Made by a program: the position numbers and the translations under genes. Below the pieces are notes generated by a model, which saw only the letters and a list, made by a program, of their open reading frames with translations, had not been told where the DNA came from and searched no databases. DNA of 64,000 nt, taken from positions 233,726 through 297,725 of the IMG/VR virus record IMGVR_UViG_3300023278_002893; one strand, 5' to 3'. This document shows, piece by piece, positions 17,266-54,289 of this stretch. Position 1 is the first letter of the stretch; every line of letters begins with the position of its first letter.

Positions 17266-17454
17266 ATGGAAAGCAGTAAGCCTCGTTGCACGAGGTGTAA
17301 GAAGCGAAGCAGATGGGGGAATAGCGAGAAATGCCTCATCTGCCTCTCCGACATTCAAGGACTGAGGGATAAACTCATTGGAAGATCCTGCGCGGAAACG
17401 CCGGAGCCTTCTGATACCCAACCCAAGTCTCGCCATTGGCCAGACAATCATTGA
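17266..17454 (+). CDS. small CxxC protein
   Basis: GAGGA RBS; CTRC...CLIC. Confidence 0.55.
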   Translation: MESSKPRCTRCKKRSRWGNSEKCLICLSDIQGLRDKLIGRSCAETPEPSDTQPKSRHWPDNH

Positions 17455-17465
17455 GGAGAATCATC

Positions 17466-18044
17466 ATGTCCAACCCCATCGTATCGAATATCACACTAGC
17501 AACACAAGCAGAGGTCGATGCTTTCAGGGGCACCTCGGTAACGGGGAACCTTACGATCAGCGGGGCTGACATCACGAACCTCGGCCCGCTGTCTTCGGTG
17601 ACCTCGGTCGGAGGAGACCTGTACATCGACAGCAACGACGCACTGACGAATCTCCTCGGGCTGGGCGGCATCACTTCGGTCGGAGGAGACCTGGACATCT
17701 CCGACAACGCCGCGCTGATGAATCTCGACGGGCTGAGCGGCATCACCTCGGTCGGAAGTGACCTGAGGATCGAAACCAACTTCTGGTTGACGAATCTCGA
17801 CGGGCTGGGCGGCATCACTTCGGTCGGAGAAAACCTGTATATCCTTGACAACGACGTGCTGACGAATCTCGACGGTCTGGGCGGCATCACTTCGGTCGGA
17901 GGAGGGCTGGACATCCGCTCCAACGCCGCGCTGATGAATCTCGACGGGCTGAGCGGCATCACTTCTTCGCTCGGAGGAAGCCTCAATATCTCGAATAATG
18001 CGGTCGGTGATAAGATAGCACGACTAAAGAAACTCATTCACTAA
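17466..18044 (+). CDS. receptor-L-domain-like leucine-rich repeat protein with 25-aa (75-bp) tandem repeats
   Basis: GAGGAG RBS; TLATQAEVDAF cap, then LxNLDGLxGITSVGGxLxIxxN repeated about 6 times. Confidence 0.8.
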   Translation: MSNPIVSNITLATQAEVDAFRGTSVTGNLTISGADITNLGPLSSVTSVGGDLYIDSNDALTNLLGLGGITSVGGDLDISDNAALMNLDGLSGITSVGSDLRIETNFWLTNLDGLGGITSVGENLYILDNDVLTNLDGLGGITSVGGGLDIRSNAALMNLDGLSGITSSLGGSLNISNNAVGDKIARLKKLIH

Positions 18045-23968: not shown

Positions 23969-25063
23969 ATGAATACCATCGCAGCTCTTTTGACCATACT
24001 TTGTATCGGTGATTCGATTACCGCGTGGGAGGATTCCTACTGCGATCAGTCGGTTCATCAGACCCTCAACGTAGGAGTCGATAGCACCCTCACAGAGACA
24101 TGGGCTGACCGTGCCTATTTCGATGAGTACGCTGGAACCGTGCTACTGGCTGAGAACATCGACGTTGTATCGATCCTGCTCTCGACCAATGACGCCTCTC
24201 GGGAGAAATCAGCAGAGAGCGTCGGCATGAACATGCAACTGATTATCGATTACCTGAAGGATTACGGTGTAGATAACATCGTGATCTCCCTTCCACCCTG
24301 GTTTCAGGATCCTACCAACTATTGGAGTAGCCTGTATAACCCATACTTGGTTGCGTCTCGTCCTGTTATTCTGGCAGTAATCGATGCCAATCCGGAGGTA
24401 AATCTCGGGGTAGATTGGACTGAGCTGGATTTACCCTTCCCCGAGATGTGGGAAGATCGAGTCCATCCCAACCCGGCAGGACATACGGTTGCGACGCCAT
24501 TCATGGACGCAGCGTTTGAGAGATACGTCCTGGAGCCTATCCCAGTTCCTGGGCTCAGTATAACGGCAATCAATAGCCTGACCATTATCCTCCTCGTGAT
24601 TGGGTATTACGGTTATTTGGAAAAGGCAAAAGCAGCGAGATCAAAACCTGACCGGAACTGGGTAGGAGTGCTTCCTCTTTTAGGCTCTACCATGTTGGGT
24701 CTGGTCGTCATCGCAGTTACGTTGTGGGGAAAACCCGCCCAAGGAAGGATCGACTATGCGCCTGTCTCAGCAGAACCTATCTGTCGTAATATGGCTTGGA
24801 TGTCGGGAGAAGGTATTTCCTGTGACTATGTCCCCAGTAAGGGTCAGGTACATTTGGTCTTCATCAGTTTTGAGTGGCATCTGGACTTCTGGTTAGAGCC
24901 CCTGGTGAGGCCGGTGTTGGATTCTCTTTGCGACGATCGTGCTGTTCACGAAATACGTGAAACAGTAGTGGATTTTGGATACACCCAAACTCGACTTGTT
25001 GCGTGTGATACCCGTTTGGGTGGAGCATGGAGCATCGTCGCAACAGGAGACGAAGATGAATAA
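23969..25063 (+). CDS. SGNH/GDSL hydrolase followed by an IPTL-CTERM-like segment and a second membrane-anchored domain
   Basis: ILCIGDSIT (block I), LSTNDA (block III), EDRVHPNPAGH (block V); PIPVPGLS-TM-KAKAAR. Confidence 0.8.
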   Translation: MNTIAALLTILCIGDSITAWEDSYCDQSVHQTLNVGVDSTLTETWADRAYFDEYAGTVLLAENIDVVSILLSTNDASREKSAESVGMNMQLIIDYLKDYGVDNIVISLPPWFQDPTNYWSSLYNPYLVASRPVILAVIDANPEVNLGVDWTELDLPFPEMWEDRVHPNPAGHTVATPFMDAAFERYVLEPIPVPGLSITAINSLTIILLVIGYYGYLEKAKAARSKPDRNWVGVLPLLGSTMLGLVVIAVTLWGKPAQGRIDYAPVSAEPICRNMAWMSGEGISCDYVPSKGQVHLVFISFEWHLDFWLEPLVRPVLDSLCDDRAVHEIRETVVDFGYTQTRLVACDTRLGGAWSIVATGDEDE

Positions 25064-30133: not shown

Positions 30134-30988
30134 TTGACACGGGATGTTGACGAGCAGGTTGTAGAAATGAGAACGGTTGGGACGGTAGATTACGTCGATG
30201 AGATCGCTATAAGAATCGTAAAGACATACGCCACTGCCCGTTTCATCCGCGACCGCTTGATGTTTAGAGTATCTTGGACAGAGGAGGACATAGCCCAGGA
30301 AATGATCTTGGGTCTCATGGCGCAAGCCGAAACGGGACACCTACCGGCTATGCTAGGTAAGACCACTCTTGAGAGAAGGTGGATTGATGCCTTCAGAAAG
30401 CTCACTACCGATTTAGAATACCGCCGGGATGGCAACACCAAGCACGACAGGGCAGTTAGAGCAGGAGACGCCCGGCGATATAGTCGAAGCGACTTGGACG
30501 TGATAAGTCCTCAAAAGTTTGATGTCGAGAAAAGCGACAGGCGTGAAACTGCAAACAGGGGGGTGAGTGTTTTGGAATTGCTAGAAGAACAAGAAATACC
30601 CCAGACTCCCGCTGAAGAATTGCGAAAGATGTATGAAGAGGCAGGTGGATGGACGAGAGCATTCCATGATAGCCTGGATATCATCCTCGCGAAGAAGATA
30701 CATGTTGCTGCTCTTAAGCTAGCCAAGGTAAGAAGTACTACGGAAAGAGCAGTTGATGCGGTATTCGAGTGGATCAAGAATCATCCGGGAGAAAATCCCA
30801 CCAGTGAATGGTTGGGTTACGAACTCAACCTTTCGCGTGAAACAGTTATCCGGAGGTTTGCCCGTCTACGTAAGGGAGAAAAGATTACACGCGAACTCGT
30901 CGAAGATAGAGAAAGCCAAACTGAGGATAACGGTCGGGTTCGTGGTCAGTATCGTTATTTTCCCGCCGAAGAAAAACAGGAGAGGTAA
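30134..30988 (+). CDS. divergent sigma70/ECF-like factor or HTH regulator
   Basis: EEDIAQEMILGL...RRWIDAFRK resembles ECF region 2; PTSEWLGYELNLSRETVIRRFARLRK resembles the region-4 HTH. Confidence 0.55.
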   Translation: MTRDVDEQVVEMRTVGTVDYVDEIAIRIVKTYATARFIRDRLMFRVSWTEEDIAQEMILGLMAQAETGHLPAMLGKTTLERRWIDAFRKLTTDLEYRRDGNTKHDRAVRAGDARRYSRSDLDVISPQKFDVEKSDRRETANRGVSVLELLEEQEIPQTPAEELRKMYEEAGGWTRAFHDSLDIILAKKIHVAALKLAKVRSTTERAVDAVFEWIKNHPGENPTSEWLGYELNLSRETVIRRFARLRKGEKITRELVEDRESQTEDNGRVRGQYRYFPAEEKQER

Positions 30989-31044
30989 TTAGTACCCAGC
31001 TAGTTGGGCCCCTTCCCCGTAAAAGAAGAAAGGAATGCCGTAAG

Positions 31045-31284
31045 ATGCGGAAGATCATAAGAGTAGGGTTGTTGCTTCTGGTTGTGCTGTCATCTACAGC
31101 CCAGAAGTGCGACGATGGAATGTCGGGAGAGTCCCGCCAAGGTAATGCTGTAGGGGTGAAAGATCACTACAAGCAGATAGATAGACCGGTAAGTGCTGTC
31201 CCTGAGCCCTCAGCTTGGATAATGTTTCTGGCCGGGGGAATCATCATCTACAAGTCAGTTGGGAAAAACAAGAAGAAGGAGTAG
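31045..31284 (+). CDS. minimal PEP-CTERM protein
   Basis: Signal-like N-terminus; AVPEPSAWIMFLAGGIIIY-KSVGKNKKKE. Confidence 0.75.
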   Translation: MRKIIRVGLLLLVVLSSTAQKCDDGMSGESRQGNAVGVKDHYKQIDRPVSAVPEPSAWIMFLAGGIIIYKSVGKNKKKE

Positions 31285-31357: not shown

Positions 31358-31663
31358 TTGCCGCAGCGCAGATGGTCAGCTGTATGCGAGGGAATTGATA
31401 TGCCGGATCCAAAATCCGAAAGTGAGAAGAAACCCTTCAGAGTAGGTGATGTGTGTGAGTACGTGGGCAGTGATGGCCACTGGAGCAAACGTCACATTAT
31501 CGAAGAGTGCAAGGTTCGCGGCCCCGAATTCTTTGAGTATTGCACCTCGCAGGGTGCGTGGATTCCCCACGAGTGCTTGAAACTCACTGAGGAATCCTCG
31601 GTGGAATCCAGAGCAGAGCTTTGGAGATTGATGGTAGAAGAGTGTGAGGAACTTTCTGAGTGA
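31358..31663 (+). CDS. hypothetical protein
   Basis: KPFRVGDVCEY SH3-like start; true start may be ATG 31400. Confidence 0.55.
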   Translation: MPQRRWSAVCEGIDMPDPKSESEKKPFRVGDVCEYVGSDGHWSKRHIIEECKVRGPEFFEYCTSQGAWIPHECLKLTEESSVESRAELWRLMVEECEELSE

Positions 31664-31673
31664 GAGGAGTACC

Positions 31674-32246
31674 ATGAAAGAAATATTCGGGAATCTGTTC
31701 AAATGTGTGAAAGCCGAAGCCATCTGTATTACCACCAATGGATACGTGAAGAAGAACGGTGGTGTGGTAATGGGACGAGGATGTGCGTTGGAAGCAACCA
31801 AGCGTTGGCCCGGGGTTGAGGATCTGGTAGCACACAGCCTGAGTGGGGGTAAGAACGTCCCGACCCTGCTTACCCTGCCGCAGGAGGAGAATCCAAATAT
31901 CACTCTCCTGCCCACGCCAATGGCCAATTACATCGTTCCGTATCACGTCGTGACCTTCCCTGTGAAGCCAATCAGATGTGGTGGAGACCAGTTGTTGCCC
32001 CGTTTTCAGAACGACAACACCAGCAGGACCTCGGTTCATCCAGGGTGGATGAGCCAAGCCAAACCCTCCCTCATCCAGCACTCTGCGAAGCTCCTGGTTG
32101 AGCTGACAGACAAGCATGGGTGGAGTAGTGTCATCATACCCAAGCCGGGATGCGGAGCTGGTGGCCTCGATTGGAAGGATGTCAAGCCTTTGATAGCCGA
32201 CATTCTGGATGACAGGTTCTATCTGATCACTTTTCCAAAGAGGTAA
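31674..32246 (+). CDS. macrodomain (ADP-ribose processing, DarG/Poa1p-like)
   Basis: AICITTNG...MGRGCALEA...VVTFPVK...IPKPGCGAGGLDWKDVKPLI. Confidence 0.85.
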   Translation: MKEIFGNLFKCVKAEAICITTNGYVKKNGGVVMGRGCALEATKRWPGVEDLVAHSLSGGKNVPTLLTLPQEENPNITLLPTPMANYIVPYHVVTFPVKPIRCGGDQLLPRFQNDNTSRTSVHPGWMSQAKPSLIQHSAKLLVELTDKHGWSSVIIPKPGCGAGGLDWKDVKPLIADILDDRFYLITFPKR

Positions 32247-32342: not shown

Positions 32343-33569
32343 ATGCCCCAGGTAAAGCTGAACTCAGAACAGAAAGCCGCGCTGGATATCGCGCTCAATA
32401 CCCGTGATCATCTGTTCATCACGGGAGGGCCAGGTACTGGTAAGTCTGTCTTGATGGAGCAAATCATCAGAGGTCTCCGGCGGCAGGGAAAGAGGGTGCG
32501 AGTAGCCGGTCCGACTGGGTTGGCGGCTCTTGCTCTGCGTGGTACTACTCTTGCCCGTTTGTTGGGCACTGGTATTGCTAAGAACACTTCGGAACTGGGT
32601 AGGATGGATATTTCTCGGGCCGAAGAAAATCTACATAAGGTCACTGATCTTATCGTAGATGAGATCAGCATGGTGTCCGGAGACTATCTGAACGTGATGG
32701 ATACCGTAATGAGAGAAGCCACTGGTGAGAAGGAACCCTTCGGAGGAATTCGAATCATCCTCTGCGGTGACTTCCTTCAGCTGCCTCCAGTACATCGACG
32801 TACCGAGCCTGATCCTGAATGGAGATGGGCATTCCAACATCCACTCTTTGCACTGACCAAGAAGATCTCTCTGGTCAAGTCAATGAGACAAGCAGACCCG
32901 CTGGACATCAAGATACTCACCGAGTTGCGTCATGGTATCATCTCCCCTCAGGGCGCTGATGTAATGGCAGACATGGTGGGGCGGCAGCTCAAACTCCCGA
33001 CCGAACTCTATCCCATCAACAAGACAGTGCATGAGATCAACGCCGAGCGATTGGCAGCACTGAAAGGGAAAGAGAAGGTGTATCGAACAGGGTATTCGCC
33101 TGGGAAATACAAGAACGTATTCGTAGATCAGGTTCCCATTGGAGAGAGGGTTGTTCTCAAGGTGGGTGTTCCGGTGATTATTCTAGCGAATAACCCCGCC
33201 CAGAGATACGCCAATGGTTCCCAAGGTGTTGTTGTTTCGATGGATTTTGATCGAGTTCGGGTGAAGCTTTCTGCTAACCGGATGGTCTCGGTTGAGAAGA
33301 AGGTATGGGAAATCACCGATGCGCGAGGTAATCGCATGGGTGAGGTGGAAGGTCTTCCGGTCCATCTCGGATGGGCTGCTACCATTCATCGTGCTCAGGG
33401 TATGACTTTGAACGAGGTGAAGACAGATATATCCAAGTGCTTTGAACCAGGTCAGGCATGTGTTGGTATGTCCAGGACGAGAAGTCTCAGCAACATCTCT
33501 CTCACCGCGCCGGTAACAGAGTTTCAAGTAGATTCAGATGCACTCAAGTTCATGATGAGCATGACATAA
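32343..33569 (+). CDS. PIF1-family SF1B DNA helicase
   Basis: FITGGPGTGKS, LIVDEISMV, FGGIRIILCGDFLQLPPV, MRQ, NGSQG, LGWAATIHRAQGMTL, VGMSRTR. Confidence 0.95.
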   Translation: MPQVKLNSEQKAALDIALNTRDHLFITGGPGTGKSVLMEQIIRGLRRQGKRVRVAGPTGLAALALRGTTLARLLGTGIAKNTSELGRMDISRAEENLHKVTDLIVDEISMVSGDYLNVMDTVMREATGEKEPFGGIRIILCGDFLQLPPVHRRTEPDPEWRWAFQHPLFALTKKISLVKSMRQADPLDIKILTELRHGIISPQGADVMADMVGRQLKLPTELYPINKTVHEINAERLAALKGKEKVYRTGYSPGKYKNVFVDQVPIGERVVLKVGVPVIILANNPAQRYANGSQGVVVSMDFDRVRVKLSANRMVSVEKKVWEITDARGNRMGEVEGLPVHLGWAATIHRAQGMTLNEVKTDISKCFEPGQACVGMSRTRSLSNISLTAPVTEFQVDSDALKFMMSMT

Positions 33570-41047: not shown

Positions 41048-41123
41048 TCCGGAGTAGCTCAGCTGGTAGAGCATCTGACTCTGAATCAGAAGGTCGAAGG
41101 TTCGAATCCTTCCTCCGGATCCA
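41048..41123 (+). tRNA. tRNA-Gln(CTG)
   Basis: TCCGGAG/CTCCGGA acceptor; TCTGA-CTCTGAA-TCAGA; GGTTCGAATCC; T73, CCA encoded. Confidence 0.95.
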
Positions 41124-41169
41124 TAAAAAACAAATAGGTATCAGGGCAGAGGAAGAAAGGACTTTACAA

Positions 41170-41490
41170 ATGACTAATGCTGAAACTCTGATAAGTTTTC
41201 CCTGGGCTGTGATGGATATTGTAAGTAATTACACCATCCAAATAATTCACGACAGCTCTGATCTAGCCAATGATCTACTTCTAACTCCGCCCAATCGAAG
41301 TGCAATTCTGGAGGAGTGTTTTCTCCGCCTCCTTCCGGAATATGAATGGACGCAGGAAGAACACCTCCAAGGTATGTGGTGCAATACAGTGGAAGATTTG
41401 GTTGAATTCTTCGAGGACATCATTGTTGGTGAAAAGAAAGAAAAGCCGGCGGCGGGAGATTTCTTTTTCAACTTCGCCGGATGTAAATAG
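41170..41490 (+). CDS. hypothetical protein between the two tRNA-Gln genes
   Basis: AAGGA RBS. Confidence 0.65.
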   Translation: MTNAETLISFPWAVMDIVSNYTIQIIHDSSDLANDLLLTPPNRSAILEECFLRLLPEYEWTQEEHLQGMWCNTVEDLVEFFEDIIVGEKKEKPAAGDFFFNFAGCK

Positions 41491-41498
41491 TTCCCTAT

Positions 41499-41572
41499 TC
41501 CCCGGTCGTCTAACGGCAGGACAGTAGCCTTTGAAGCTGCGCATCGTGGTTCAAATCCACGTCGGGGATCCA
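41499..41572 (+). tRNA. tRNA-Gln(TTG)
   Basis: TCCCCGG/TCGGGGA; GTAGC-CTTTGAA-GCTGC; GGTTCAAATCC; CCA. Confidence 0.95.
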
Positions 41573-41597
41573 TAAGCCAGGAGACGGCTAGCAACCC

Positions 41598-42608
41598 ATG
41601 AAAGGAAAAATCGTGACTAACGAAAGAGAAGCGGAGCTTCGCAAATTTGAATCCCAAGCCATGCGCATGGTTAGGGCTTACTTACTAAAAGAAGTTTATC
41701 ACGATGCCGATCACGAAGAACTCGCCAAGACCTGGGGTGTAAAAATTCGCAAGGTCAGGCAGCTTTTACTCTTCGAGATCCCGAAGTTTCATGAAATAGT
41801 ACAACTTCTCGATCTCGCTGGTTTTGATCTTGGTATTGCTATCCACGATCCGGGTTCCGGCAAAGAAGTGACTCTTTACGCCGCAAATAATCTATCAGGG
41901 GAAGCGCCCATTGTTCCCAGAATCAAGGAACAAACTCCTAAGTATAAAACTCCAGACACGATCGCGACGGGTTCCGAGGAAGGATTGGATTTCCTCCCCG
42001 TCACGAACGAGAGAGCCGTAGATGGCTCCTTCGACATCGGCACGGAGCTAGGTCCCGATGCCATCGAGGGAGAATTCCAAGAAATCGACTCCAGAGACCT
42101 GCTAACTGTGATGATCGAAGAAGGTCAGCCTTGTGGTGGCTGCGGCCATCAGCCCCGGATGGCAGGTTCCACAATGTGTGAAAACTGTACTCGGGGTACA
42201 GATGTATCGGAGTCATCTCCCACAGAGGTTCAATTCTGCGAGAGATGTAAGTCCGCCGATCATCACGGTGAGGCGTTCTTCTGCGGTGAGTGCGGAACGA
42301 CCTTGGTTTGGAAAGCGACCAACCTCGTAGAGATGTATCTGAGAACGGGTCACCAAGCGGAGCTTGACCGCACTCGGGAATCGGATCTCTGCCATAACTG
42401 CCTGAATCATGCACCGATCCCTGATTCCGATCTTTGTCACTATTGCACCGTGATGGGAGTAGAGTGCGACATTCCAGAAGAGCCGGAAGAATCGGAATAT
42501 CCCCTCAGTTTGAACGCGAGGGTTGATCTGCACAAGGCAGACCAGTCGCGTTCGTCACATACAGAGAGACTCCTACGTCAGTCGGGTCTCATTGAAAGCG
42601 AGGAATAG
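41598..42608 (+). CDS. multi-Zn-ribbon protein with possible N-terminal HTH
   Basis: Six CxxC pairs; ELAKTWGVKIRKVRQLL. Confidence 0.7.
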   Translation: MKGKIVTNEREAELRKFESQAMRMVRAYLLKEVYHDADHEELAKTWGVKIRKVRQLLLFEIPKFHEIVQLLDLAGFDLGIAIHDPGSGKEVTLYAANNLSGEAPIVPRIKEQTPKYKTPDTIATGSEEGLDFLPVTNERAVDGSFDIGTELGPDAIEGEFQEIDSRDLLTVMIEEGQPCGGCGHQPRMAGSTMCENCTRGTDVSESSPTEVQFCERCKSADHHGEAFFCGECGTTLVWKATNLVEMYLRTGHQAELDRTRESDLCHNCLNHAPIPDSDLCHYCTVMGVECDIPEEPEESEYPLSLNARVDLHKADQSRSSHTERLLRQSGLIESEE

Positions 42609-42612
42609 AACC

Positions 42613-43038
42613 ATGAAATTGACCTTCGAACAGACCCAAGGCACTCGAACTTTTTATTTCCCCCTCGATCGTGACAAGGTCACTCCCCCGGAGTTCACCG
42701 TGGTCATCCGACCTCTCAACGGTGAGGACTTCGACTTTGATCCCAACGAAGACCAGTACGAAGCCGGAGTGGCTTTCTGCTCCAAGGACGACCAGTTCTC
42801 CAAGAGGAGAGGACGTCTTCTGGCGTACCACAGAATGTTCGGCAAGAATGCTTTCGTAGGCACCTCGACGGAAATCGCCCACGCAATCGAAGCCAAGCTA
42901 GATTTGTTGGTGTCCCGCCGGCCTTTCTCATTCAGTGCCCCTGCAATTCAGGACGTGCTGCACGTCATCGCGGCCGACGCTCTGGCCGGATACTTCAAGG
43001 CCAAGAAGGAGAATCGCGAAGCGGCGGCGAACGCCTAG
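42613..43038 (+). CDS. phage-type hypothetical protein
   Basis: AGGA RBS; GVAFCSKDDQFSKRRGRLLAY motif. Confidence 0.75.
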   Translation: MKLTFEQTQGTRTFYFPLDRDKVTPPEFTVVIRPLNGEDFDFDPNEDQYEAGVAFCSKDDQFSKRRGRLLAYHRMFGKNAFVGTSTEIAHAIEAKLDLLVSRRPFSFSAPAIQDVLHVIAADALAGYFKAKKENREAAANA

Positions 43039-43112
43039 AAGGAAACACAGTAGTTTCTTCAGGTAGTGAAGAAGTTTCTGTTTAGTGTGTTATAAAAAAC
43101 CTTTCAGAAGGA

Positions 43113-43565
43113 GTGGTGATACCCTTGAAAGATGGGATTACGGTAGGTGAGGCCAGGGAGCAAGTCTCTGGTTTCTTGAGCGAGACAGGCTGCTACGACA
43201 TCTGTGCCAGTTGTCCTGTCTATGGGGAAGATGGCTGTTGCGATGGGTGTGATCATTTGGTGAAGGGTAAAGGATGCGGCCAGCCAAATTTGTCCTGCCT
43301 TTCCTACACCTGTGGGGTGCTGAACATGCACCTAAGTCGCCAGGATGCGAGTGGGAGTCTGTTTCCTAATAGGTTGGATGAACTGACCGATCTGCTCTAC
43401 GGTCTCCCAAGGGAGGGATACCGAGGATGTGAGCGAAGGGACGAGATGGAGGTGCTGATCATCGAAGATCCTCTGAAAATCAATCGAGTTGGTCTCGTGG
43501 CCTTGATCGATGCAGGAATCGCAGACATGATCGAGTCGGACGCAGAGGAGAAAGACAAGCAATGA
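43113..43565 (+). CDS. Cys-rich protein
   Basis: AAGGAG RBS; CYDICASC...GCCDGC...C...CLSYTC. Confidence 0.7.
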   Translation: MVIPLKDGITVGEAREQVSGFLSETGCYDICASCPVYGEDGCCDGCDHLVKGKGCGQPNLSCLSYTCGVLNMHLSRQDASGSLFPNRLDELTDLLYGLPREGYRGCERRDEMEVLIIEDPLKINRVGLVALIDAGIADMIESDAEEKDKQ

Positions 43566-43927
43566 GCACCGAATTCGAACTCGGCGTCGAGGGAGTGGCC
43601 CAGCTCAGGCGGAAGATCCAGGGAGTCCGAAAAGAAAAGGACGGCGTTTATTCCGAACGTAATAGACTGGTAGCAGCTCTCTCCAAACTCTTTCCCTCTT
43701 GGTTGGAAGATCATCCAGCAGAAGATAAGGAGTGGGCAGAGCATTGGAGAACCATCGTGTTCATCGACGGGCCCGGCGGTCAGATGTCTTGGCACATTCA
43801 CTTCTCCGAGATCGAGATGTTCTCACATCTGGAACACCGCGGGGGCGATAGTTGGGACGGGCACACCACCGAACAGAAGTACGAGAGGCTGGCTAGCCTA
43901 ACCGTACTCGAAAGGGCGAGGGAATAA
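43562..43927 (+). CDS. WDGH-motif phage protein
   Basis: ERNRLVAAL...IDGPGGQMSWH...WDGHTTEQKYERL. Confidence 0.75.
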   Translation: MSTEFELGVEGVAQLRRKIQGVRKEKDGVYSERNRLVAALSKLFPSWLEDHPAEDKEWAEHWRTIVFIDGPGGQMSWHIHFSEIEMFSHLEHRGGDSWDGHTTEQKYERLASLTVLERARE

Positions 43928-44230
43928 ATGAGTGAGATGCGACTGCAGGAGGTGTCTCTGATCGGACGGATGAAGAGCGATCCGATCTCCACGGACAGCA
44001 AGGAATGTTATTTCAAGATCGATGCTGGGGGTAATCTTCCCTTCCCCTGCTTTTGTAACGGAAAGACTGCCGAGAACGCAACCAAGTTCCTGAAGGACGG
44101 GGATGAGGTTGCGATCGAGGGTAAGCTACACATGAAGCAGTTCAGGGGTGAAAAGCAACCCATACTGCTTGTATTTGCGAGGCACATTAGTTATGGCAGG
44201 AAGACGCACTCGTTGGTATCCAACTATTAG
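43928..44230 (+). CDS. short SSB/PriB-like OB-fold protein
   Basis: VSLIGRM..DP...PCFCNGKTAENATKFLKDGDEVAIEGKL; no acidic tail. Confidence 0.75.
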   Translation: MSEMRLQEVSLIGRMKSDPISTDSKECYFKIDAGGNLPFPCFCNGKTAENATKFLKDGDEVAIEGKLHMKQFRGEKQPILLVFARHISYGRKTHSLVSNY

Positions 44231-44346
44231 CGGAATCTTTGCGATCTATATAGGTGTGGATGCTCTAAATTATTCTGGAATAAAGGGTCTAATTCTTTGG
44301 CCCTTCTTATTATTAGCTTGGGCGGTATCGTACAAAGTATATTTAT

Positions 44347-44844
44347 TTGTCTGTGAAGGCGATGAGGAAATTATTTATGAAACCAAAGGTAATGGTGGAG
44401 GATCGGGAGAATCTGAGGCTGGTATCGCTCGTCCGAAAGATAGACGAATACCTTCTGCAGCGCCAAACAGCGGAAATCTTCGGACAGCAAGCCGAATCAC
44501 GAGCCGGATTATCGGAGAGGTTGCCCAACGGCAATCTCTTCGTACAAAAGAAGCTGAGTCACGGACTTCGGATTCGAGCCGAGATAGAGAACGACAAACA
44601 GACCGTGACTTTGCGGATTTTCTTAGATCCTCTTAGATTCAATAATTGGACTAAAGCCTTAGGGCCGGTGGAGTTCTTTTATATGGATCCTTTTGGAGTG
44701 GAAGTTTATTTTAAGGCTGGTAAATGGGCGATATCTATAGATAAGAAGGTAGTTCCTTTCAAGAACACCAACGAAATCTATGAAATGGCCCGCATTGAAG
44801 TCCAGACCAGAGGTAATGCACGGAAGCTAGTGCGTGTAGCCTAG
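44347..44844 (+). CDS. hypothetical protein
   Basis: Co-directional; start uncertain. Confidence 0.5.
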   Translation: MSVKAMRKLFMKPKVMVEDRENLRLVSLVRKIDEYLLQRQTAEIFGQQAESRAGLSERLPNGNLFVQKKLSHGLRIRAEIENDKQTVTLRIFLDPLRFNNWTKALGPVEFFYMDPFGVEVYFKAGKWAISIDKKVVPFKNTNEIYEMARIEVQTRGNARKLVRVA

Positions 44845-44853
44845 GAGGTCTCC

Positions 44854-45561
44854 GTGGAAAAATGCAGACCTATTATTTTCTTGATCTTATTAGGATCGTC
44901 TTTGTTTGCGCTCTATTCGAACAGAAGACAGCCTGAGATTATACCCCCATCCCTCATCGAAGAACCAAAACTCCGGTGGTCAGAGCTATCCTTTGAATAC
45001 CGGTTCGTGGTAATGAGTGAGCTTCGTGCAAACCACTTAGTGAAGATCTGCCATGCAGATCCTGAACTAGCATCCCGTATAGTAGCTGCGGTGGAAGAGG
45101 GCGCCGAACTATACAGCTTGGATATCGATCTCGTTCTGGGTCTTATCCTGGTGGAATCTCACTGCTCTCCCGAAGCCGTGAGTTTTATGGGAGCACTGGG
45201 GCTGATGCAGGTCATGCCCGCAACTGGGAAGTTCATCTCACACTCGTTGGGATTCAAATGGTCAGGTGATGGGGTTCTTCGGGCGATAGAAAGCAACATC
45301 GCTTATGGAACTTGGTATCTACATTACTTACGGACACGCTTTCCGAAAAACGAACATGCTGTTATCGCCTCCTATAATTGGGGGCCGGAACACATACAAG
45401 GAAGGATAAATCGATCCGAGCCTCTTCCCCAAGTTTATCCGGGGAAAGTGTATGAAGCCACAGAAAAACTCCGTCAATATATCTGGAGCGACGAATACAA
45501 TAAGATATATTGGCAAGGTGTGGATAAATACATCGAGAACGCTCGAAGAGAGGGAAGATAA
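44854..45561 (+). CDS. membrane-anchored SLT lytic transglycosylase
   Basis: LILVES (catalytic Glu), GALGLMQVMPATG, NIAYGTWYL, ASYNWGP; N-terminal TM. Confidence 0.9.
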   Translation: MEKCRPIIFLILLGSSLFALYSNRRQPEIIPPSLIEEPKLRWSELSFEYRFVVMSELRANHLVKICHADPELASRIVAAVEEGAELYSLDIDLVLGLILVESHCSPEAVSFMGALGLMQVMPATGKFISHSLGFKWSGDGVLRAIESNIAYGTWYLHYLRTRFPKNEHAVIASYNWGPEHIQGRINRSEPLPQVYPGKVYEATEKLRQYIWSDEYNKIYWQGVDKYIENARREGR

Positions 45562-45565
45562 TAAT

Positions 45566-46450
45566 ATGTTGGTAGCATTTTTTGGAGATACACATGGCAA
45601 TCTAAATATCATGTACGCCATGTCTTTGGCCTGGGAAAAAAGGACAGGCTTCGAGATAGATTTGATTGTACAAGTTGGAGACTTCGGATTCTGGCTCTCA
45701 GAAAATACTGTAGATAAGATGACCGCCAAGCACCGGAAAAGAAATAACGACCGAAGAACACAGGTAGGTGAAGAACAAAGAGCCATTTGCGGGGACTACC
45801 CCGAATACGTGCTGGGAGAACTTACTGCACCCAAGAAAACCCTGGTCATTCGTGGCAACCACGAAGATCAAGGATACCTGATGCTGAGAGAAAGGAAACA
45901 TCAGAAAGAGAATCCCGATGATTACATGAACCGGGCGATTGAAATGGTTCCCAACATCTACTATCTACCTGATGGGCATGTGGTTGATATAGAGGGTGTG
46001 AAATTCGGAGGCCTGGGAGGAAACTTCTCCTATAAGACCTTCCACACTTGGAACTACTGGGACGAACACCGAACGCTTCGTTCAAAGCGGCACGGGGGTG
46101 AGCAACGTCGCCTGAACCATTTTACACGAGATCGTTGGGAAATGCTGTCTCGTAGAAAGATGGATGTCCTGCTCCTCCATGATGCTCCCAGTGGTATCGG
46201 AGTTGTAGGTGCTTCGTCCTTGAAGGGTAAGATGCCTGAGGACGAGATGACCAGCCTTATATACGGGTCGTGTGGTAGCCCTCAGCTACTAGAGCTGATC
46301 GAAGCAATAGCCCCCAAGCATGTCTATTGCGGACATTGGCATCAGTTTCGAAAAGCGAAGTTCGGAGAAACTCACACCACTGTGTTGAATCTAACAGGTA
46401 ACCCTCCCACAGAAGATTGTATGGAGGTAATAGAACTATGCCCCGAGTAG
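45566..46450 (+). CDS. calcineurin-like metallophosphoesterase
   Basis: GDTHG, VGDFG, RGNHE, LLHDAP, YCGHWH. Confidence 0.9.
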   Translation: MLVAFFGDTHGNLNIMYAMSLAWEKRTGFEIDLIVQVGDFGFWLSENTVDKMTAKHRKRNNDRRTQVGEEQRAICGDYPEYVLGELTAPKKTLVIRGNHEDQGYLMLRERKHQKENPDDYMNRAIEMVPNIYYLPDGHVVDIEGVKFGGLGGNFSYKTFHTWNYWDEHRTLRSKRHGGEQRRLNHFTRDRWEMLSRRKMDVLLLHDAPSGIGVVGASSLKGKMPEDEMTSLIYGSCGSPQLLELIEAIAPKHVYCGHWHQFRKAKFGETHTTVLNLTGNPPTEDCMEVIELCPE

Positions 46451-47196
46451 ATTTGGGAGACGTCTTCGACTTCCCCACCATTTCCGATACCGAACTCGCG
46501 GCAGGTTTGTTGGATCCCATCGGCCTTCCGGAAATAAATCTTACGGAAGAAGATACAGTAAATCTGGACATCCCACTTTTAGAGTTGAGTGAGGATGAGT
46601 GGATAACTGAACTAGATGATGCGTTCCAAGATATATTTATCCCAACCACCGTGATAACCAGAGGGGTTGGATACTGCGAGAATGATAAGTGCTCTGATTA
46701 TGGTAAGGGTAGCTTCTTGTTCATGCATGAGGGTAACACTTTCACCTGTGTTACCTGTAATAAAACAAGCGACCATGTGTTATCGGAAAGAGGTATCCCG
46801 GAAAGGGAAGGTAACATCCCTTTTGCTACTGTTCGTATAGAATACGCATACGCGCCTGCTCGCCGTGAATACACAGAGATAGCTGTGCTCACCGACGAGG
46901 GATATAATGGACCGAGTGGTACTTATACAGTCCAAAATCCTTTATGTAAGACTTCCGAGCGCGCGTTCAAAATTGCCGAAACTCACCTATCCATAATAAA
47001 CCAAACGGGAGCATTCAGCGACGATGATTTGTCCGAAGTTCCGAAGTGTCATGAGATCCTCCTCAGTTTCGATAAACCGATCGTTGAACTAAGGAAAGAT
47101 CTGGAAAGACTAGAACGAAGATTAAGTAGTACACCTTTCCTCCAGAAAGAATTAGTAGTTTCAGATTTCATTGAAGTGGAATCTGACCCAAAATAA
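46438..47196 (+). CDS. Zn-binding protein, paralog of 33968..34633, with acidic N-terminus
   Basis: VGYCENDKC...KGSFL...CVTC...ERG; KTSERAFKIAE; LLSFD. Confidence 0.75.
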   Translation: MPRVDLGDVFDFPTISDTELAAGLLDPIGLPEINLTEEDTVNLDIPLLELSEDEWITELDDAFQDIFIPTTVITRGVGYCENDKCSDYGKGSFLFMHEGNTFTCVTCNKTSDHVLSERGIPEREGNIPFATVRIEYAYAPARREYTEIAVLTDEGYNGPSGTYTVQNPLCKTSERAFKIAETHLSIINQTGAFSDDDLSEVPKCHEILLSFDKPIVELRKDLERLERRLSSTPFLQKELVVSDFIEVESDPK

Positions 47197-47211
47197 GAAG
47201 AGGAGAAGCAC

Positions 47212-47613
47212 GTGGATCAAAATCGAGTAGTGCTGGCAGGACGATTGACGCGCGCGGCGGAGTTTCACCCCCCAGGACAAGTAGGACAAGCCCACTGCAC
47301 ATTCACACTTGCTATCAATAGAGTGGTAGTAGATAAGGGTGGTCCAAAAGCAGATTTCATTCCCTGTTCTTTGTGGGGTGACGCTGCCCAGAAATTCGTT
47401 GAGGAGCGTGCGAAGGGCGATTCGGTTGGTGTAATAGGAAGACTTAGGGCCAATTCCGTACTACAACCTGATGGGAAAAATCGCTGCTTCTTCGAAATCA
47501 GAGTAGAGGAATTTTCGAGTGGGTGCAAGTCCTTGAAGAATCTCCAGCCCGCCCCAAAGGCGACTACCGCAACTAAAGCAGTAAGTTTGCTTCAGAAAGA
47601 ATTCACCCCATGA
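47212..47613 (+). CDS. ssb: single-stranded DNA-binding protein (third OB-fold gene)
   Basis: NRVVLAGRLTR...FTLAINR...ADFIPCSLWG...KGDSVGVIGRL; basic tail. Confidence 0.85.
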   Translation: MDQNRVVLAGRLTRAAEFHPPGQVGQAHCTFTLAINRVVVDKGGPKADFIPCSLWGDAAQKFVEERAKGDSVGVIGRLRANSVLQPDGKNRCFFEIRVEEFSSGCKSLKNLQPAPKATTATKAVSLLQKEFTP

Positions 47614-48545
47614 GCAATAAATCTCAGTCGAAATCTGAACGCACGGAGGCGATTTCGCCCGAAGATCTTCTAGACGCCGCTTTTACAGAGGCCGATCTGA
47701 GAGAACTACACAGCATCAAACACGAGTTAGGTACCTGTGTGAGGTGGGGTACTCTGGTTGCACAAATTTTTACTTCCCTGCGAATTGGAGTAGATACTCT
47801 GGTTTTTCTGGAACATCCAGGTCAAAACCCGGCTGCAGTAAAAGTGAATCCCTATGAATCTTTATTTCCAATTGATCAGGAAAAGATCAACGGCCCCTCG
47901 AAGAAATCCAAGATGTGTAGAGAGTATGTACTGCTACATATAATAAAGAAGCTCCTCGGGGCACTGAAGACACACGTAAATCAAAAATTGGCTGAGTTCG
48001 ATGTAGTTGATGCGGAGACTGAAGGGCAACTTCGAGATCTCCTCGCCGAGAGCTACATCGCCAATGCCTACGACAGTGCTGATGAAGAGGAGATGGATCT
48101 CGTGGCCAGTACCGACGGCGAAATACCCATACCCAGTGAAGAATGCGTACACGACGACAGCAGTTTTCACGGAGTATCTGCCGAAGAGTCCGAATCGGGT
48201 AAAGACGAACTTCACAGGTTTTGTAGAACCTGCAACACTTGGCTTAGCAGACAGGTCTTGAAGAATAGGCTCAGTGATCAGTCTCGCTTCCGACAGAAAC
48301 GGAGAAAGCGGGAGTGTAGTCATCAAGGTGAGTGGGTAGAAGGTGGGGAGGGAAAAACAGCAATCTGCTCCAACTGCAAGGAGACAATCTCGAACCCTAG
48401 CGAATATAGTTGGGTGAAGGCGGGGTTGGAACCCTTTGGAGACGATCCTGATCAAGATGAGATTATGGAAATCCCGGTCGGACAATCGAGACGGGAGATC
48501 TCAGCAACAGTTAGAGCTAACGCTGCAACGAAGGAGTCGGTGTGA
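47610..48545 (+). CDS. hypothetical protein with C-terminal Cys/His motifs
   Basis: ATGA overlaps; CVH...FCRTC; CSH...CSNC. Confidence 0.7.
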   Translation: MSNKSQSKSERTEAISPEDLLDAAFTEADLRELHSIKHELGTCVRWGTLVAQIFTSLRIGVDTLVFLEHPGQNPAAVKVNPYESLFPIDQEKINGPSKKSKMCREYVLLHIIKKLLGALKTHVNQKLAEFDVVDAETEGQLRDLLAESYIANAYDSADEEEMDLVASTDGEIPIPSEECVHDDSSFHGVSAEESESGKDELHRFCRTCNTWLSRQVLKNRLSDQSRFRQKRRKRECSHQGEWVEGGEGKTAICSNCKETISNPSEYSWVKAGLEPFGDDPDQDEIMEIPVGQSRREISATVRANAATKESV

Positions 48546-48976
48546 GGGTACTAATCGTAGAGGATAACGTTGCGCTGATCCCTGAATATCTGAGAATCTT
48601 CAAGGAAATACTAGGAGATGGCGATACTTATACTCACGTTGCGTCCGTCCACGACGCCATCGAGTCGCTTTTCGAAGAAAATTGGGATGTCATCTTAGTC
48701 GATACTGATCTTGGAGTCGCTGGAAAATTCAAGAGTGGAATTGAGGGAGGGGACGAGTTAACTCTGAGGAATGGTTATGATTTGGTCAGATTCAGACGTC
48801 GGGTAGAACAATTGGAATCAGACCGCATCGTTCCTGCCAAGATTATTGGGTTAGCACCCAATCGGTCAGCTTTGCCTGCTTTTGACACAGTTGGAACCAA
48901 CCATCGACTCTTCAAGTTGGATATCCCTGGAATTGCCAAACAGATCCGCGCATACTCCGACGAAGTACAGGCCTAG
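48542..48976 (+). CDS. CheY-like receiver domain protein
   Basis: MRVLIVEDN...DVILVDTDL...NGYDLVR...AKIIGL. Confidence 0.75.
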   Translation: MRVLIVEDNVALIPEYLRIFKEILGDGDTYTHVASVHDAIESLFEENWDVILVDTDLGVAGKFKSGIEGGDELTLRNGYDLVRFRRRVEQLESDRIVPAKIIGLAPNRSALPAFDTVGTNHRLFKLDIPGIAKQIRAYSDEVQA

Positions 48977-48986
48977 GGAGAAGACC

Positions 48987-49271
48987 GTGAATGACGTGAT
49001 TGAGACTACAGGTATAGTCGTGGATGTCCTGGGTAGCAACAATTACCGGGTGGAAGTAGGTCCCGACGATGCTAGTAAGAGAACGATTCTCTGTTACCTG
49101 GGTGGCCGGATGCGCAGATATCGAATCAATATTCTTCCCGGTGATGAAGTAACAATCACGACATCCCCTCCGTTTGAACGAGGAAGGATCACCTACCGCG
49201 GAAAGAAGTTGGATCGGACAGAAAAGTCCGGGAAGCGTCCCAAGGGACGTGGTGCCCGGAGGAGAAGGTAA
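48987..49271 (+). CDS. infA: translation initiation factor IF-1
   Basis: DVIETTGIVVDVL...ILCYLGGRMRRYRINILPGDEV...RGRITYR; GTG start after GGGAG. Confidence 0.9.
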   Translation: MNDVIETTGIVVDVLGSNNYRVEVGPDDASKRTILCYLGGRMRRYRINILPGDEVTITTSPPFERGRITYRGKKLDRTEKSGKRPKGRGARRRR

Positions 49272-49282
49272 TACTTAGTTGC

Positions 49283-49367
49283 GGGGAAGTGGTGAAATTG
49301 GCAGACACGCGGGATTCAAGATGCCGTGCCTTCGGGCGTGAGGGTTCGACTCCCTCCTTCCCCACCA
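49283..49367 (+). tRNA. tRNA-Leu(CAA)
   Basis: GGGGAAG/CTTCCCC; TTCAAGA loop; variable arm GCC-TTCG-GGC; CCA; one G.G mismatch in the anticodon stem. Confidence 0.9.
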
Positions 49368-49607
49368 AGCAAAGGAGAAGACATGACAGTTGAAGAAATG
49401 CGAGAGAAAACAGTGGGCCTGAAGTCCGCCGACCGGCTCGCCGGGGCAGCTGATCTTTGGAATGTAACTGCCGAGATCTGTGAGAGATTGGAAGCCATTC
49501 AGAAACGCCTGGATGAACCCATGAACGTATATACGAAATCCGATCCGGGGATAACAGAGTAGAGGATTTTTTTTTGGGTAATCATTTACCCAGGAGAAAG
49601 AAAAGAA

Positions 49608-50033
49608 ATGCCGAAAGTATTCGTGTACGGAACCCTTCGTAAGGGTGATTGTCGAAACCGCATGCTCGTCGAGGCGACCTGCGTTGCCGCCGAAGCCTAT
49701 CTCGACGGATTTGATCTGCTCGACATGGGATCCTTTCCAGGAATCGTTCCCACCGAGTCCGCATCTGTCACTCGCGTGAGGGGGGAAGTCTATGATGTCT
49801 CCGACGATCTGCTCGCCGATCTCGATGTAGTGGAGGGTTTCCAGGAAGATCGACCAGATGATTCTTTGTACCTTCGACAAGAAGTGACTGTCAAGATCTT
49901 CGGCAGTGAGGATATCGAAGTCCTTACCTACATTTACAATGAAAGAAGATATCGACGACACGATCGTCACAACATCATCGAGTCGGGTGACTGGTTCGAT
50001 ACCAAAGCACAGCCGCCACCGCCCAACTTCTAG
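49608..50033 (+). CDS. gamma-glutamylcyclotransferase (AIG2-like)
   Basis: VFVYGTLRKG...FPGIV...VRGEVY...LDVVEG...LYLR. Confidence 0.9.
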   Translation: MPKVFVYGTLRKGDCRNRMLVEATCVAAEAYLDGFDLLDMGSFPGIVPTESASVTRVRGEVYDVSDDLLADLDVVEGFQEDRPDDSLYLRQEVTVKIFGSEDIEVLTYIYNERRYRRHDRHNIIESGDWFDTKAQPPPPNF

Positions 50034-50952: not shown

Positions 50953-50962
50953 GGAGAGATCG

Positions 50963-52761: not shown

Positions 52762-52764
52762 GCA

Positions 52765-54284: not shown

Positions 54285-54289
54285 AGTTC

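What the first reader, a model, noticed from the sequence alone, without database searches (positions are those of the whole stretch)
31045..31284. Phage-encoded minimal PEP-CTERM protein
Seen: a signal-like N-terminus, only about 30 residues of mature region, then VPEP + TM + Lys cluster. Established: PEP-CTERM proteins are exosortase substrates linked to EPS export in Gram-negative bacteria. Inference: with almost no passenger domain, it may be a decoy that saturates host exosortase and remodels the surface. It also constrains the host range.
Basis: partly seen in the sequence, partly recalled or inferred. Interest (0 to 1): 0.6.

Follow-up and report, generated by a model that had tools for sequence, protein, structure and literature searches.

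The report
Small PEP-CTERM protein in jumbo phage
A 298-kb phage carries a real 79-residue gene with a textbook bacterial PEP-CTERM surface-sorting tag, one of two such tagged genes in this phage, so it most likely uses the host's exosortase as a cargo rather than blocking it as a decoy.

Summary
Window 31045..31284 (+) is a 79-aa ORF: signal-like N-terminus, a passenger of about 32 residues, then VPEP, 14 uncharged residues and a Lys cluster. It passes NCBIfam TIGR02595 (21.1 bits, cut-off 16) but not Pfam PF07589 (17.5, cut-off 20.7).

- **Real gene:** its one close homologue (88 aa, 48% identity) keeps the signal peptide and AVPEPSAW tail through synonymous changes. The middle diverges, with an indel.
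- **Truly phage-borne:** the record is a 297,725-bp virus genome with terminase, DNA polymerase and many tRNAs, and no exosortase.
- **Not alone:** the same phage encodes a 250-aa protein with a canonical PEP-CTERM tail. In a related phage fragment the mini gene follows a PEP-CTERM-tagged LRR gene.
- **More than chance:** 2 of 2,392 frames fit the tail pattern, against 0.055 expected by shuffling and 0 of 9,295 frames in 1 Mb of other viral DNA.
- **Accessory gene:** a complete relative (TerL 68%) has no PEP-CTERM gene.

The best reading is an accessory cargo of the host exosortase that delivers a short Cys-bearing peptide to the envelope. The decoy idea is not supported: the phage needs the pathway for its own larger cargo, and bacterial PEP-CTERM proteins of 85-100 aa exist. 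The host is unidentified, so processing is untested.

The parts
31030..31035 (+). Shine-Dalgarno-like AAGGAA, 9 nt before the ATG
   Evidence: Read from the sequence. The same AAGGAATG-N6-AAGATG arrangement precedes the homologous gene in L003.
31045..31284 (+). Whole gene: 79-aa mini PEP-CTERM protein (P0001) plus stop codon
   Evidence: ORF list. TIGR02595 scores 21.1 bits against a cut-off of 16. The homologue P0002 shares 48% identity. Codon-level conservation was measured.
31045..31101 (+). Residues 1-19: predicted Sec signal peptide (MRKIIR, hydrophobic core, S-T-A before the predicted cut)
   Evidence: Hydrophobic block at residues 3-20. Sixteen of 22 residues are identical to P0002, with pN 0.15 against pS 0.50. 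The cleavage site is inferred by the -3/-1 rule, not predicted by software.
31102..31197 (+). Residues 20-51: short hydrophilic passenger with a conserved Cys22 near the mature N-terminus
   Evidence: Only QKC[DN]D at its start and Q-x-D-x-PV-x-A at its end are shared with P0002. The middle diverges (pN 0.50) and carries a 13-residue indel.
31198..31209 (+). V52-P53-E54-P55: the PEP motif of the sorting signal
   Evidence: AVPEPSAW is identical in P0002 and in many ordinary PEP-CTERM proteins of metagenomes.
31210..31251 (+). Residues 56-69: 14 uncharged residues, the predicted membrane helix of the tag
   Evidence: Hydrophobic block at residues 56-70 and an uncharged run of 14 after PEP.
31252..31281 (+). 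Residues 70-79: basic tail (5 Lys in the last 10 residues, Lys rather than the usual Arg)
30134..30988 (+). Upstream neighbour, 284 aa, possibly a phage sigma-factor-like protein (lead only)
   Evidence: No Pfam, PHROG or NCBIfam hit. Atlas feature neighbours include viral Sigma70_r2 clusters at 0.93. It is absent from the relative G006.
31644..32246 (+). Downstream neighbour, macro-domain protein, conserved in the relative G006
   Evidence: PF01661 scores 24.5 bits against a cut-off of 22, and phrog_335 also matches. The homologous ORF in G006 is L087:4121-4711.
32343..33569 (+). PIF1/Dda-like helicase, which anchors the synteny with G006
   Evidence: PF05970 at 2.5e-30 and phrog_325 at 4.9e-55. 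It is 47% identical to its G006 counterpart.
17436..18044 (+). LRR-repeat protein (202 aa) without a signal peptide or tag. Its roughly 50%-identical counterpart in the related phage fragment L003 carries a PEP-CTERM tail.
   Evidence: tblastn of P0003 against the genome. ORF translation. The P0003 tail scores 17.9 bits on TIGR02595.

Best explanation
This is a genuine small PEP-CTERM protein encoded as an accessory gene in a variable island of a 298-kb jumbo phage. The proposed course is as follows.
1. The protein is made in the infected cell and exported by Sec.
2. The signal peptide is cut after Ala19.
3. The remaining 60 residues are held in the inner membrane by the C-terminal helix, with the Lys-rich tail in the cytoplasm and VPEP at the periplasmic face.
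4. The host's exosortase recognises and cleaves the tag. This is the route proposed for all PEP-CTERM proteins.
5. A peptide of roughly 33-36 residues, bearing one conserved Cys, is released or passed on to the envelope or exopolysaccharide layer.

It is one of at least two exosortase-type cargos of this phage. The likely purpose is to alter the surface or matrix of the infected cell, for example to exclude other phages or to change aggregation.

Shown: the gene, its architecture, its conservation, its phage location and its companions.
Inferred: export, cleavage by exosortase, and the purpose.
For: Architecture:
- It meets every sequence-level criterion of Haft 2006 (PMC1569441): PEP, a helix and a basic cluster at the extreme C-terminus, plus an N-terminal signal.
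- TIGR02595 scores above its cut-off.
- The tail is almost letter for letter that of ordinary 200-400-aa PEP-CTERM proteins in metagenomes, for example TAVPEPSAWIMMLAGFG....

Real, selected gene:
- The homologue P0002 keeps the signal peptide and the tail, with mostly synonymous differences there. pN/pS is 0.15/0.50 in the signal and 0.22/0.44 in the tail.
- The middle is free to vary.
- The two genes share a Shine-Dalgarno-like site.

Companions:
- A second PEP-CTERM protein, P0004, lies at G000:C1:16528-17277. It has a signal peptide and the tail SPEPGTLVLLAGGLVGLAVLGRRR.
- P0004 has its own 48%-identical tagged homologue, P0005.
- In L003 the mini gene follows a PEP-CTERM LRR gene, and that gene's untagged kin is in this phage. 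L003 is therefore from a related phage.

Beyond chance: 2 observed against 0.055 expected, and 0 in 1.03 Mb of other viral DNA.

Phage context:
- Terminase, DNA polymerase, 15 tRNAs in the window, and a CheckV completeness estimate of 100%.
- No compositional anomaly: gene GC is 0.49 and window GC is 0.50.

Accessory status: the complete relative G006 lacks it and has a 167-aa lipoprotein gene in the same interval.
Against: - No host is known, so the presence of an exosortase is untested.
- The phage has no exosortase of its own.
- Pfam PF07589 is below its gathering score.
- The helix after PEP is short (14 uncharged residues), and the basic cluster is Lys rather than Arg.
- TIGR02595 is a 24-position model. 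Haft 2006 warns that single hits can be false. Two of 14 control genomes had a hit over the cut-off.
- No expression data could be obtained.
- The complex prediction with a surrogate exosortase gave no verdict.
- The purpose of the released peptide is pure inference.
Confidence: 0.72

Rival explanations
1. Decoy. The mini protein has no useful passenger. It is made in bulk to occupy or jam the host exosortase, so that host PEP-CTERM proteins are no longer sorted and the surface or EPS layer changes.
For: - The passenger is only about 32 residues, has no domain and evolves fast, while the tag is conserved.
- The phage has no exosortase of its own, so whatever the tag does is done through the host enzyme.
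Against: - The same phage and its relative encode full-size PEP-CTERM cargos that need a working exosortase. One of them lies directly upstream of the mini gene in L003.
- Mini PEP-CTERM proteins of 85-101 aa exist as bacterial clusters and in metagenomes, so short length is no sign of a decoy.
- The mature N-terminus QKC[DN]D is conserved.
- Nothing in the sequence suggests resistance to cleavage.
Confidence: 0.1
2. A small phage membrane protein unrelated to exosortase. Candidates are a holin-like or antiholin-like protein, or an inner-membrane superinfection-exclusion protein, with two hydrophobic segments and a charged C-terminus. On this view the PEP motif is a coincidence.
For: - Two hydrophobic segments and a Lys-rich C-terminus in a 79-aa phage protein are also typical of holins.
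- The Pfam PEP-CTERM score is below its threshold.
- The HMM is very short, and hits over the cut-off occur in 2 of 14 control genomes.
Against: - AVPEPSAW is exactly conserved in the homologue while the loop diverges.
- The tail is near-identical to hundreds of bona fide PEP-CTERM tails.
- A second canonical PEP-CTERM protein is in the same phage, and a tagged neighbour is in the relative.
- Chance expectation is 0.055.
- The neighbours are a sigma-like gene, a macro-domain gene and a helicase, not lysis genes.
- There is no meaningful PHROG lysis hit: Rz-like spanin at E 0.54 only.
- There is no lipobox, so it is not a spanin.
Confidence: 0.1
3. Not a functional gene: a chance ORF, or a decaying remnant of a captured host PEP-CTERM gene.
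For: - The family is tiny. The exhaustive search found only P0002 and a marginal P0006.
- The word search found one homologue.
- There is no expression evidence.
Against: - Purifying selection acts on both ends across 48% divergence.
- The Shine-Dalgarno-like site is conserved.
- The full architecture is intact in both copies.
- The gene is co-directional and tightly packed with its neighbours.
Confidence: 0.04

Closest known systems
PEP-CTERM sorting-signal proteins and exosortase (EpsH/XrtA) of diderm bacteria (Haft et al. 2006, PMC1569441; TIGR02595, PF07589)
   Same: - An N-terminal signal peptide.
- A tag of about 24-27 residues at the extreme C-terminus, with VPEP, a hydrophobic helix and a basic cluster.
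- No recognisable domain in the passenger.
- It occurs together with other tagged proteins.
- It scores over the TIGR02595 cut-off.
   Different: - It is encoded by a phage that has no exosortase.
- The passenger is only about 32 residues.
- The basic cluster is Lys-rich rather than Arg-rich.
- The helix is at the short end (14 uncharged residues).
- It scores below the Pfam gathering score.
Short bacterial PEP-CTERM proteins (Atlas clusters of 85-100 aa, PF07589-positive, in Thermodesulfobacteriota, Nitrospirota and Planctomycetota; metagenomic P0006, 101 aa)
   Same: The layout is the same: a signal peptide, a polar low-complexity passenger of a few dozen residues, and a PEP-CTERM tail.
   Different: No demonstrable homology outside the signal and the tag. 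P0006 reaches only E 8e-5 with the two-sequence profile. Those proteins are bacterial or of unknown origin, and this one is in a phage.
PepA, the flocculation-associated PEP-CTERM protein of Zoogloea (NF033554; Gao et al. 2018, as cited in PMC12642866)
   Same: It is an exosortase-type cargo with a role in cell aggregation. The phage's larger PEP-CTERM protein P0004 gives a weak match to NF033554 at its C-terminal end, residues 209-250 (17.9 bits, cut-off 80).
   Different: No passenger homology is shown, and the match is far below the cut-off. The mini protein does not match NF033554 at all.
Phage moron genes for envelope proteins, for example lipoproteins that block superinfection (general knowledge, not tested here)
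   Same: It is a small secreted or membrane protein encoded in a variable slot between conserved phage genes. The relative G006 has a 167-aa lipoprotein gene, with an LIAGNC lipobox, in the same interval.
   Different: Those use the lipoprotein pathway. This one carries an exosortase-type tag, which I did not find described for phages in the literature searched or in PHROGs.

Membership tests
PEP-CTERM sorting domain (TIGR02595 / PF07589) | Near-invariant Pro-Glu-Pro motif | tested here: met
   V52-P53-E54-P55 at nt 31198-31209. It is identical in the homologue P0002.
PEP-CTERM sorting domain (TIGR02595 / PF07589) | Predicted transmembrane helix directly after PEP | tested here: met
   There are 14 uncharged residues (56-69), with a Kyte-Doolittle block at 56-70. 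This is short but within the range seen in the metagenomic tails. No dedicated TM predictor was run.
PEP-CTERM sorting domain (TIGR02595 / PF07589) | Cluster of basic residues after the helix, at the very C-terminus of the protein | tested here: met
   There are 5 Lys in the last 10 residues, and the stop codon comes 24 residues after PEP. The residues are Lys rather than the usual Arg.
PEP-CTERM sorting domain (TIGR02595 / PF07589) | N-terminal signal peptide, with no other membrane segment in between | tested here: met
   MRKIIR, a hydrophobic core, then S-T-A. The only hydrophobic blocks are at residues 3-20 and 56-70. This was judged by rule, not by SignalP.
PEP-CTERM sorting domain (TIGR02595 / PF07589) | Score over the curated HMM cut-off | tested here: inconclusive
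   TIGR02595 scores 21.1 bits against 16, which passes. PF07589 scores 17.5 bits against 20.7, which fails. By Haft 2006, PF07589 sees only 22% of TIGR02595 members.
PEP-CTERM sorting domain (TIGR02595 / PF07589) | Occurs several times per genome | tested here: met
   The phage has two instances, at 23.5 and 18.8 bits in the six-frame search. The related phage fragment L003 has two adjacent ones. The count in the host genome is unknown.
PEP-CTERM sorting domain (TIGR02595 / PF07589) | An exosortase (EpsH family) is present in the same cell, which has an outer membrane and EPS genes | not testable with these tools
   There is no PF09721 match in the phage, and the host is not identified. No bacterial kin of the mini protein was found in one genome per GTDB species. 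Only weak kin of P0004 were found in Verrucomicrobiota and Poribacteria MAGs, of which only the Verrucomicrobiota MAG has exosortases.
PEP-CTERM sorting domain (TIGR02595 / PF07589) | Cleavage or sorting by exosortase | not testable with these tools
   This needs an experiment. The complex prediction with a surrogate exosortase gave no verdict.
Holin | Small membrane protein encoded next to an endolysin or other lysis genes | tested here: not met
   The neighbours within about 3 kb are unknowns, a sigma-like gene, a macro-domain gene and a helicase. No lysis family appeared in Pfam or PHROGs. The rest of the genome was not searched for an endolysin.
Unimolecular spanin / lipoprotein | Lipobox with Cys at +1 of the mature protein | tested here: not met
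   The residues before Cys22 are A-Q-K, which is not a lipobox.

The most novel reading that the evidence does not exclude
The mini protein is not a cargo in the usual sense. It is a phage-made competitor or modulator of the host exosortase, the decoy reading. Alternatively, this jumbo-phage lineage as a whole has taken over the host exosortase pathway to dress the infected cell with phage-chosen proteins and peptides. The evidence excludes neither. The decoy form is the less likely of the two.
Probability: 0.1. Interest if true: 0.7.

Novelty: new member of a known kind. Interest (0 to 1): 0.42.

Why it matters
PEP-CTERM/exosortase sorting is a widespread but poorly studied pathway of environmental diderm bacteria, linked to exopolysaccharide and floc formation.

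I found no description of phage-encoded PEP-CTERM proteins:
- none in the papers searched;
- none in PHROGs;
- none in 1 Mb of other viral loci.

If the tag is used, three things follow:
- It would show a phage borrowing this host sorting route to change the infected cell's surface.
- It would restrict the possible hosts of an uncultured 298-kb phage to exosortase-bearing diderms.
- It would supply a very small natural substrate, with a mature form of about 60 residues, for studying exosortase cleavage.

The gene itself is an ordinary-looking member of a known domain family. The specific decoy idea that made it attractive is not supported.

Tried and rejected
**Host identification**
- Nucleotide search of 8 kb around the gene against cultured phages found no match.
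- The mini protein against cultured phages by tblastn found no match.
- TerL is only about 30% identical to Bacillus and Microcystis phages, so it gives no host information.
- A scan of GTDB genomes with the mini-protein alignment found no relative.
- The P0004 alignment found only 28-34% kin in a Verrucomicrobiota MAG, Poribacteria MAGs and an unnamed MAG. A sample of 401 Verrucomicrobiota genomes gave three weak hits.
- 'Relatives' cannot be drawn for a virus record.
- A paper search for the sample numbers placed only the relative G006, in Namib salt-pan mats. It did not place this phage.

**Expression**

**Synteny in more relatives**
- The helicase alone found only the identical record.
- The helicase alignment found only G006 plus distant, unrelated viruses.

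**Structure**
- The P0004 fold had a mean pLDDT of 49.8. It looks all-beta but is too poor for a fold search, so none was run.
- The Atlas model of the mini protein has pLDDT 0.54, and its structural neighbours are meaningless.

**Complex prediction**
- Residues 20-79 of the mini protein were tested against an exosortase of the Verrucomicrobiota MAG. The result was no verdict (score 0.20, mark 0.34), which is evidence neither way.

**Other**
- The metagenome scan mostly returned unrelated PEP-CTERM proteins that match only the tail. This helps to show the tail is typical but adds no family members.
It was redone from the stored files.
- Rejected readings: lipoprotein or spanin (no lipobox), and a reverse-strand gene (only short overlapping ORFs of 54-57 aa).

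Full report
**What is there.** Window 31045..31284 (+) is an ORF of 79 codons plus a stop. Its ATG is the first possible start in a 117-codon open frame.

The product has these parts:
- A basic N-terminus (MRKIIR), a hydrophobic core, and an S-T-A site at residues 17-19 that fits signal peptidase I.
- A hydrophilic stretch from Q20 to A51.
- V-P-E-P at residues 52-55.
- 14 uncharged residues at 56-69.
- A tail with five Lys in the last ten residues.

NCBIfam's PEP-CTERM domain model TIGR02595 scores 21.1 bits against a cut-off of 16. Several full-length PEP-CTERM family models match only the tail. Pfam PF07589 scores 17.5 bits, under its gathering score of 20.7. The paper that defined the domain says PF07589 sees only 22% of TIGR02595 members (PMC1569441).

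**Is it more than chance?**
- I wrote a strict pattern: PEP, then at least 12 uncharged residues, then at least three K/R, then the stop. I applied it to all 2,392 stop-to-stop frames of 50 aa or more in the whole 297,725-bp genome.
- Exactly two frames fit, this one and one other. Shuffling the residues of every frame 200 times gave a mean of 0.055 fits, and two or more fits in 0.5% of shuffles.
Sixteen of the 17 confirmed matches are ordinary proteins, with open frames of about 200-460 aa, whose last 25-30 residues look almost the same as here. One example is ...TAVPEPSAWIMMLAGFGIVGYGMRRAH. Most of the 16 that are complete at the 5' end begin with a signal-like N-terminus.
- The tail is thus a textbook PEP-CTERM tail. 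Its only peculiarities are Lys in place of Arg and a helix at the short end of the range.

**Is it a real gene?**
- The word-based protein search found one homologue, P0002, of 88 aa and 48% identity. It lies on a 1,075-bp Logan contig, L003.
- The exhaustive HMMER search with the two-sequence profile added only a marginal 101-aa protein of the same layout (P0006, E 8e-5) and one tail-only hit.
- In the P0001/P0002 alignment, LLLVVLSSTAQKC in the signal region and AVPEPSAW in the tag are identical. The middle differs in most positions and carries a 13-residue Pro-rich insertion in P0002.
- At codon level, differences in the signal region are mostly synonymous (pN 0.15, pS 0.50). The tail gives pN 0.22 and pS 0.44, and the middle gives pN 0.50 with pS saturated at 0.87.
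- Both genes are preceded by the same AAGGAATG-N6-AAGATG arrangement.
- This is the signature of a translated gene whose two ends are under selection.

**Is it phage-encoded?**
- The window is the last 64 kb of an IMG/VR virus record of 297,725 bp, rated 100% complete by CheckV.
- The genome encodes a large terminase, a DNA polymerase and a Lon-like protease. The window alone holds 15 tRNA genes.
- The mini gene sits in a long co-directional block, between a 284-aa protein with a sigma-factor-like lead, a macro-domain protein and a PIF1/Dda-like helicase.
- Its GC content (0.49) equals that of the window (0.50).
- A second IMG/VR record is 100% identical over the 16,237 bp compared.
- There is no exosortase in the phage.

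**It is not alone.** This changes the interpretation.
- The six-frame TIGR02595 search of the phage found a second, stronger hit at 23.5 bits.
- That hit is a 250-aa protein, P0004, at G000:C1:16528-17277, outside the window. It has a signal peptide, a passenger of about 195 residues predicted to be all-beta (low-confidence model), and the canonical tail SPEPGTLVLLAGGLVGLAVLGRRR.
- P0004 also has just one close homologue, P0005, at 48% identity and likewise tagged.
- On L003 the mini-protein gene lies directly downstream of an LRR-repeat protein, P0003, that ends in VPEPGVSGLIAGALVLAGLNRRRR.
- P0003 has roughly 50%-identical kin in this phage, at window 17436..18044 and in a cut copy at the start of the record. 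Neither copy carries the tag.
- Two genes of L003 thus have relatives of about 50% identity in this phage, so L003 comes from a related phage.
- All five proteins (P0001-P0005) pass the TIGR02595 cut-off.
- This small phage sub-lineage therefore carries several different proteins with exosortase-type tags.

**It is accessory.**
- TerL relatives at 60-83% identity are common in IMG/VR.
- None of the 15 related records searched has a PEP-CTERM hit. They include G006, a complete 295,848-bp genome with terminal repeats and TerL 68%.
- G006 has no kin of P0001 or P0004.
- G006 keeps the flanking genes: a homologue of the 230-aa protein, the membrane protein, the macro-domain protein and the helicase. 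Between the membrane protein and the macro gene it has a 167-aa lipoprotein gene instead.
- The slot is thus a variable island that holds a gene for an exported envelope protein in both phages.

**How it most likely works.**
- The model of Haft et al. 2006 runs as follows. The signal peptide takes the protein through Sec and is removed. The C-terminal helix holds the rest in the inner membrane with PEP at the periplasmic face. The exosortase cleaves the tag and passes the protein on towards the outer layers.
- Applied here, a peptide of about 33-36 residues with one conserved Cys near its N-terminus would be released or attached.
- I take this to be a phage-directed change of the infected cell's surface or matrix, alongside the larger tagged proteins. 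Excluding other phages or changing aggregation are the obvious purposes. Both are inference.

**Why not a decoy.**
- A phage that jams the exosortase would strand its own larger cargo.
- Short PEP-CTERM proteins are not exceptional. The nearest Atlas clusters are bacterial proteins of 85-100 aa, several of them PF07589-positive. P0006 is a further example.
- The mature N-terminus is conserved.
- The idea is not excluded, since timing could separate the two roles. I give it 0.1.

**Why not a holin or another membrane protein.** The exact conservation of the tag, its identity to real tags, the tagged companions and the non-lysis neighbourhood all argue against this reading.

**Host.** The host is unresolved.
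- No bacterial kin of the mini protein was found in one genome per GTDB species.
- The P0004 passenger has only distant kin (28-34%) in a Verrucomicrobiota MAG, three Poribacteria MAGs and an unnamed MAG. Only the Verrucomicrobiota MAG has exosortases, with four matches.
- A sample of 401 Verrucomicrobiota genomes gave nothing closer.
- The relative G006 comes from Namib salt-pan microbial mats (bioRxiv 10.1101/2022.02.18.481119). The source of this phage's own sample was not identified.

**Known or new.** The domain and the pathway are known, so this is a new member of a known kind.
- What is unusual is the carrier. I found no paper describing phage-encoded PEP-CTERM proteins. The nearest is a preprint noting a PEP-CTERM domain in a Dehalococcoides mobile element.
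- No PHROG family matches any of the five proteins.
- No cultured phage has kin of the mini protein.
- A narrow IMG/VR pattern scan found about six other true-looking tails, all on contigs of about 6-17 kb whose viral nature I did not check.

**Limits.** No signal-peptide or TM predictor, no reads, no host, no experiment. The complex prediction gave no verdict and is not evidence.

Noticed in passing
G000:C1:16528-17277 (+), outside the window; L001:820-1572: A second PEP-CTERM protein of the same phage. It is 250 aa, with a signal peptide, a probably all-beta passenger and the canonical tail SPEPGTLVLLAGGLVGLAVLGRRR. Its one close homologue (P0005, 48% identity, also tagged) lies on a 2-kb Logan contig next to an ATP_bind_3 gene.
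   Followed up: yes
window 17436..18044 (+) and G000:C1:3-224 (L005:3-224): Two LRR-repeat genes without a tag; the copy at the start of the record is cut at its 5' end. Their counterpart in the related phage fragment L003 ends in a PEP-CTERM tail, so the tag has been gained or lost on an otherwise conserved phage protein. The cut copy suggests the record is circularly permuted or incomplete at that end.
   Followed up: partly
window 41048..63466 (+): There are 15 tRNA genes on the + strand in 22 kb: Gln x2, Leu x2, Arg x3, Thr, Lys, Met x2, Asp, Glu x2 and Ser. This is typical of jumbo phages.
   Followed up: no
L087:3475-3978 (G006:C1:45474-45977): In the complete relative G006, the interval that holds the mini PEP-CTERM gene in this phage holds a 167-aa predicted lipoprotein (LIAGNC lipobox). 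The slot seems reserved for exported envelope proteins.
   Followed up: partly
window 30134..30988 (+): The 284-aa upstream gene has no Pfam, PHROG or NCBIfam match. Its Atlas feature neighbours include viral Sigma70_r2 clusters (score 0.93), and its C-terminus looks like an HTH. It may be a phage sigma-like factor. It is absent from G006.
   Followed up: partly
G000:C1:160368-174029 (-) and 122567-130459 (-), outside the window: Two giant ORFs of 4,554 and 2,631 codons lie in the structural region of the phage. They were not examined.
   Followed up: no
window 31644..32246 (+): A macro-domain protein (PF01661, 24.5 bits; phrog_335 'phosphatase') lies next to the helicase and is conserved in G006. 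It may be an ADP-ribose-removing enzyme with a counter-defence role.
   Followed up: no
L088, L093, L097, L098, L103, L110 (IMG/VR contigs): Other IMG/VR contigs, of about 6-17 kb, carry frames of about 100-490 aa that end in true-looking AVPEP[ST]AW PEP-CTERM tails. Whether they are viral or host fragments was not checked.
   Followed up: no
window 23969..25063 (+) and 6641..8407 (-): There is a GDSL-like lipase/acylhydrolase (PF13472, 8e-11). A 587-aa protein gives a He_PIG Ig-like match that is below the Pfam cut-off (22.4 bits, cut-off 24). The pair may be envelope- or polysaccharide-acting accessory or tail proteins.
   Followed up: no
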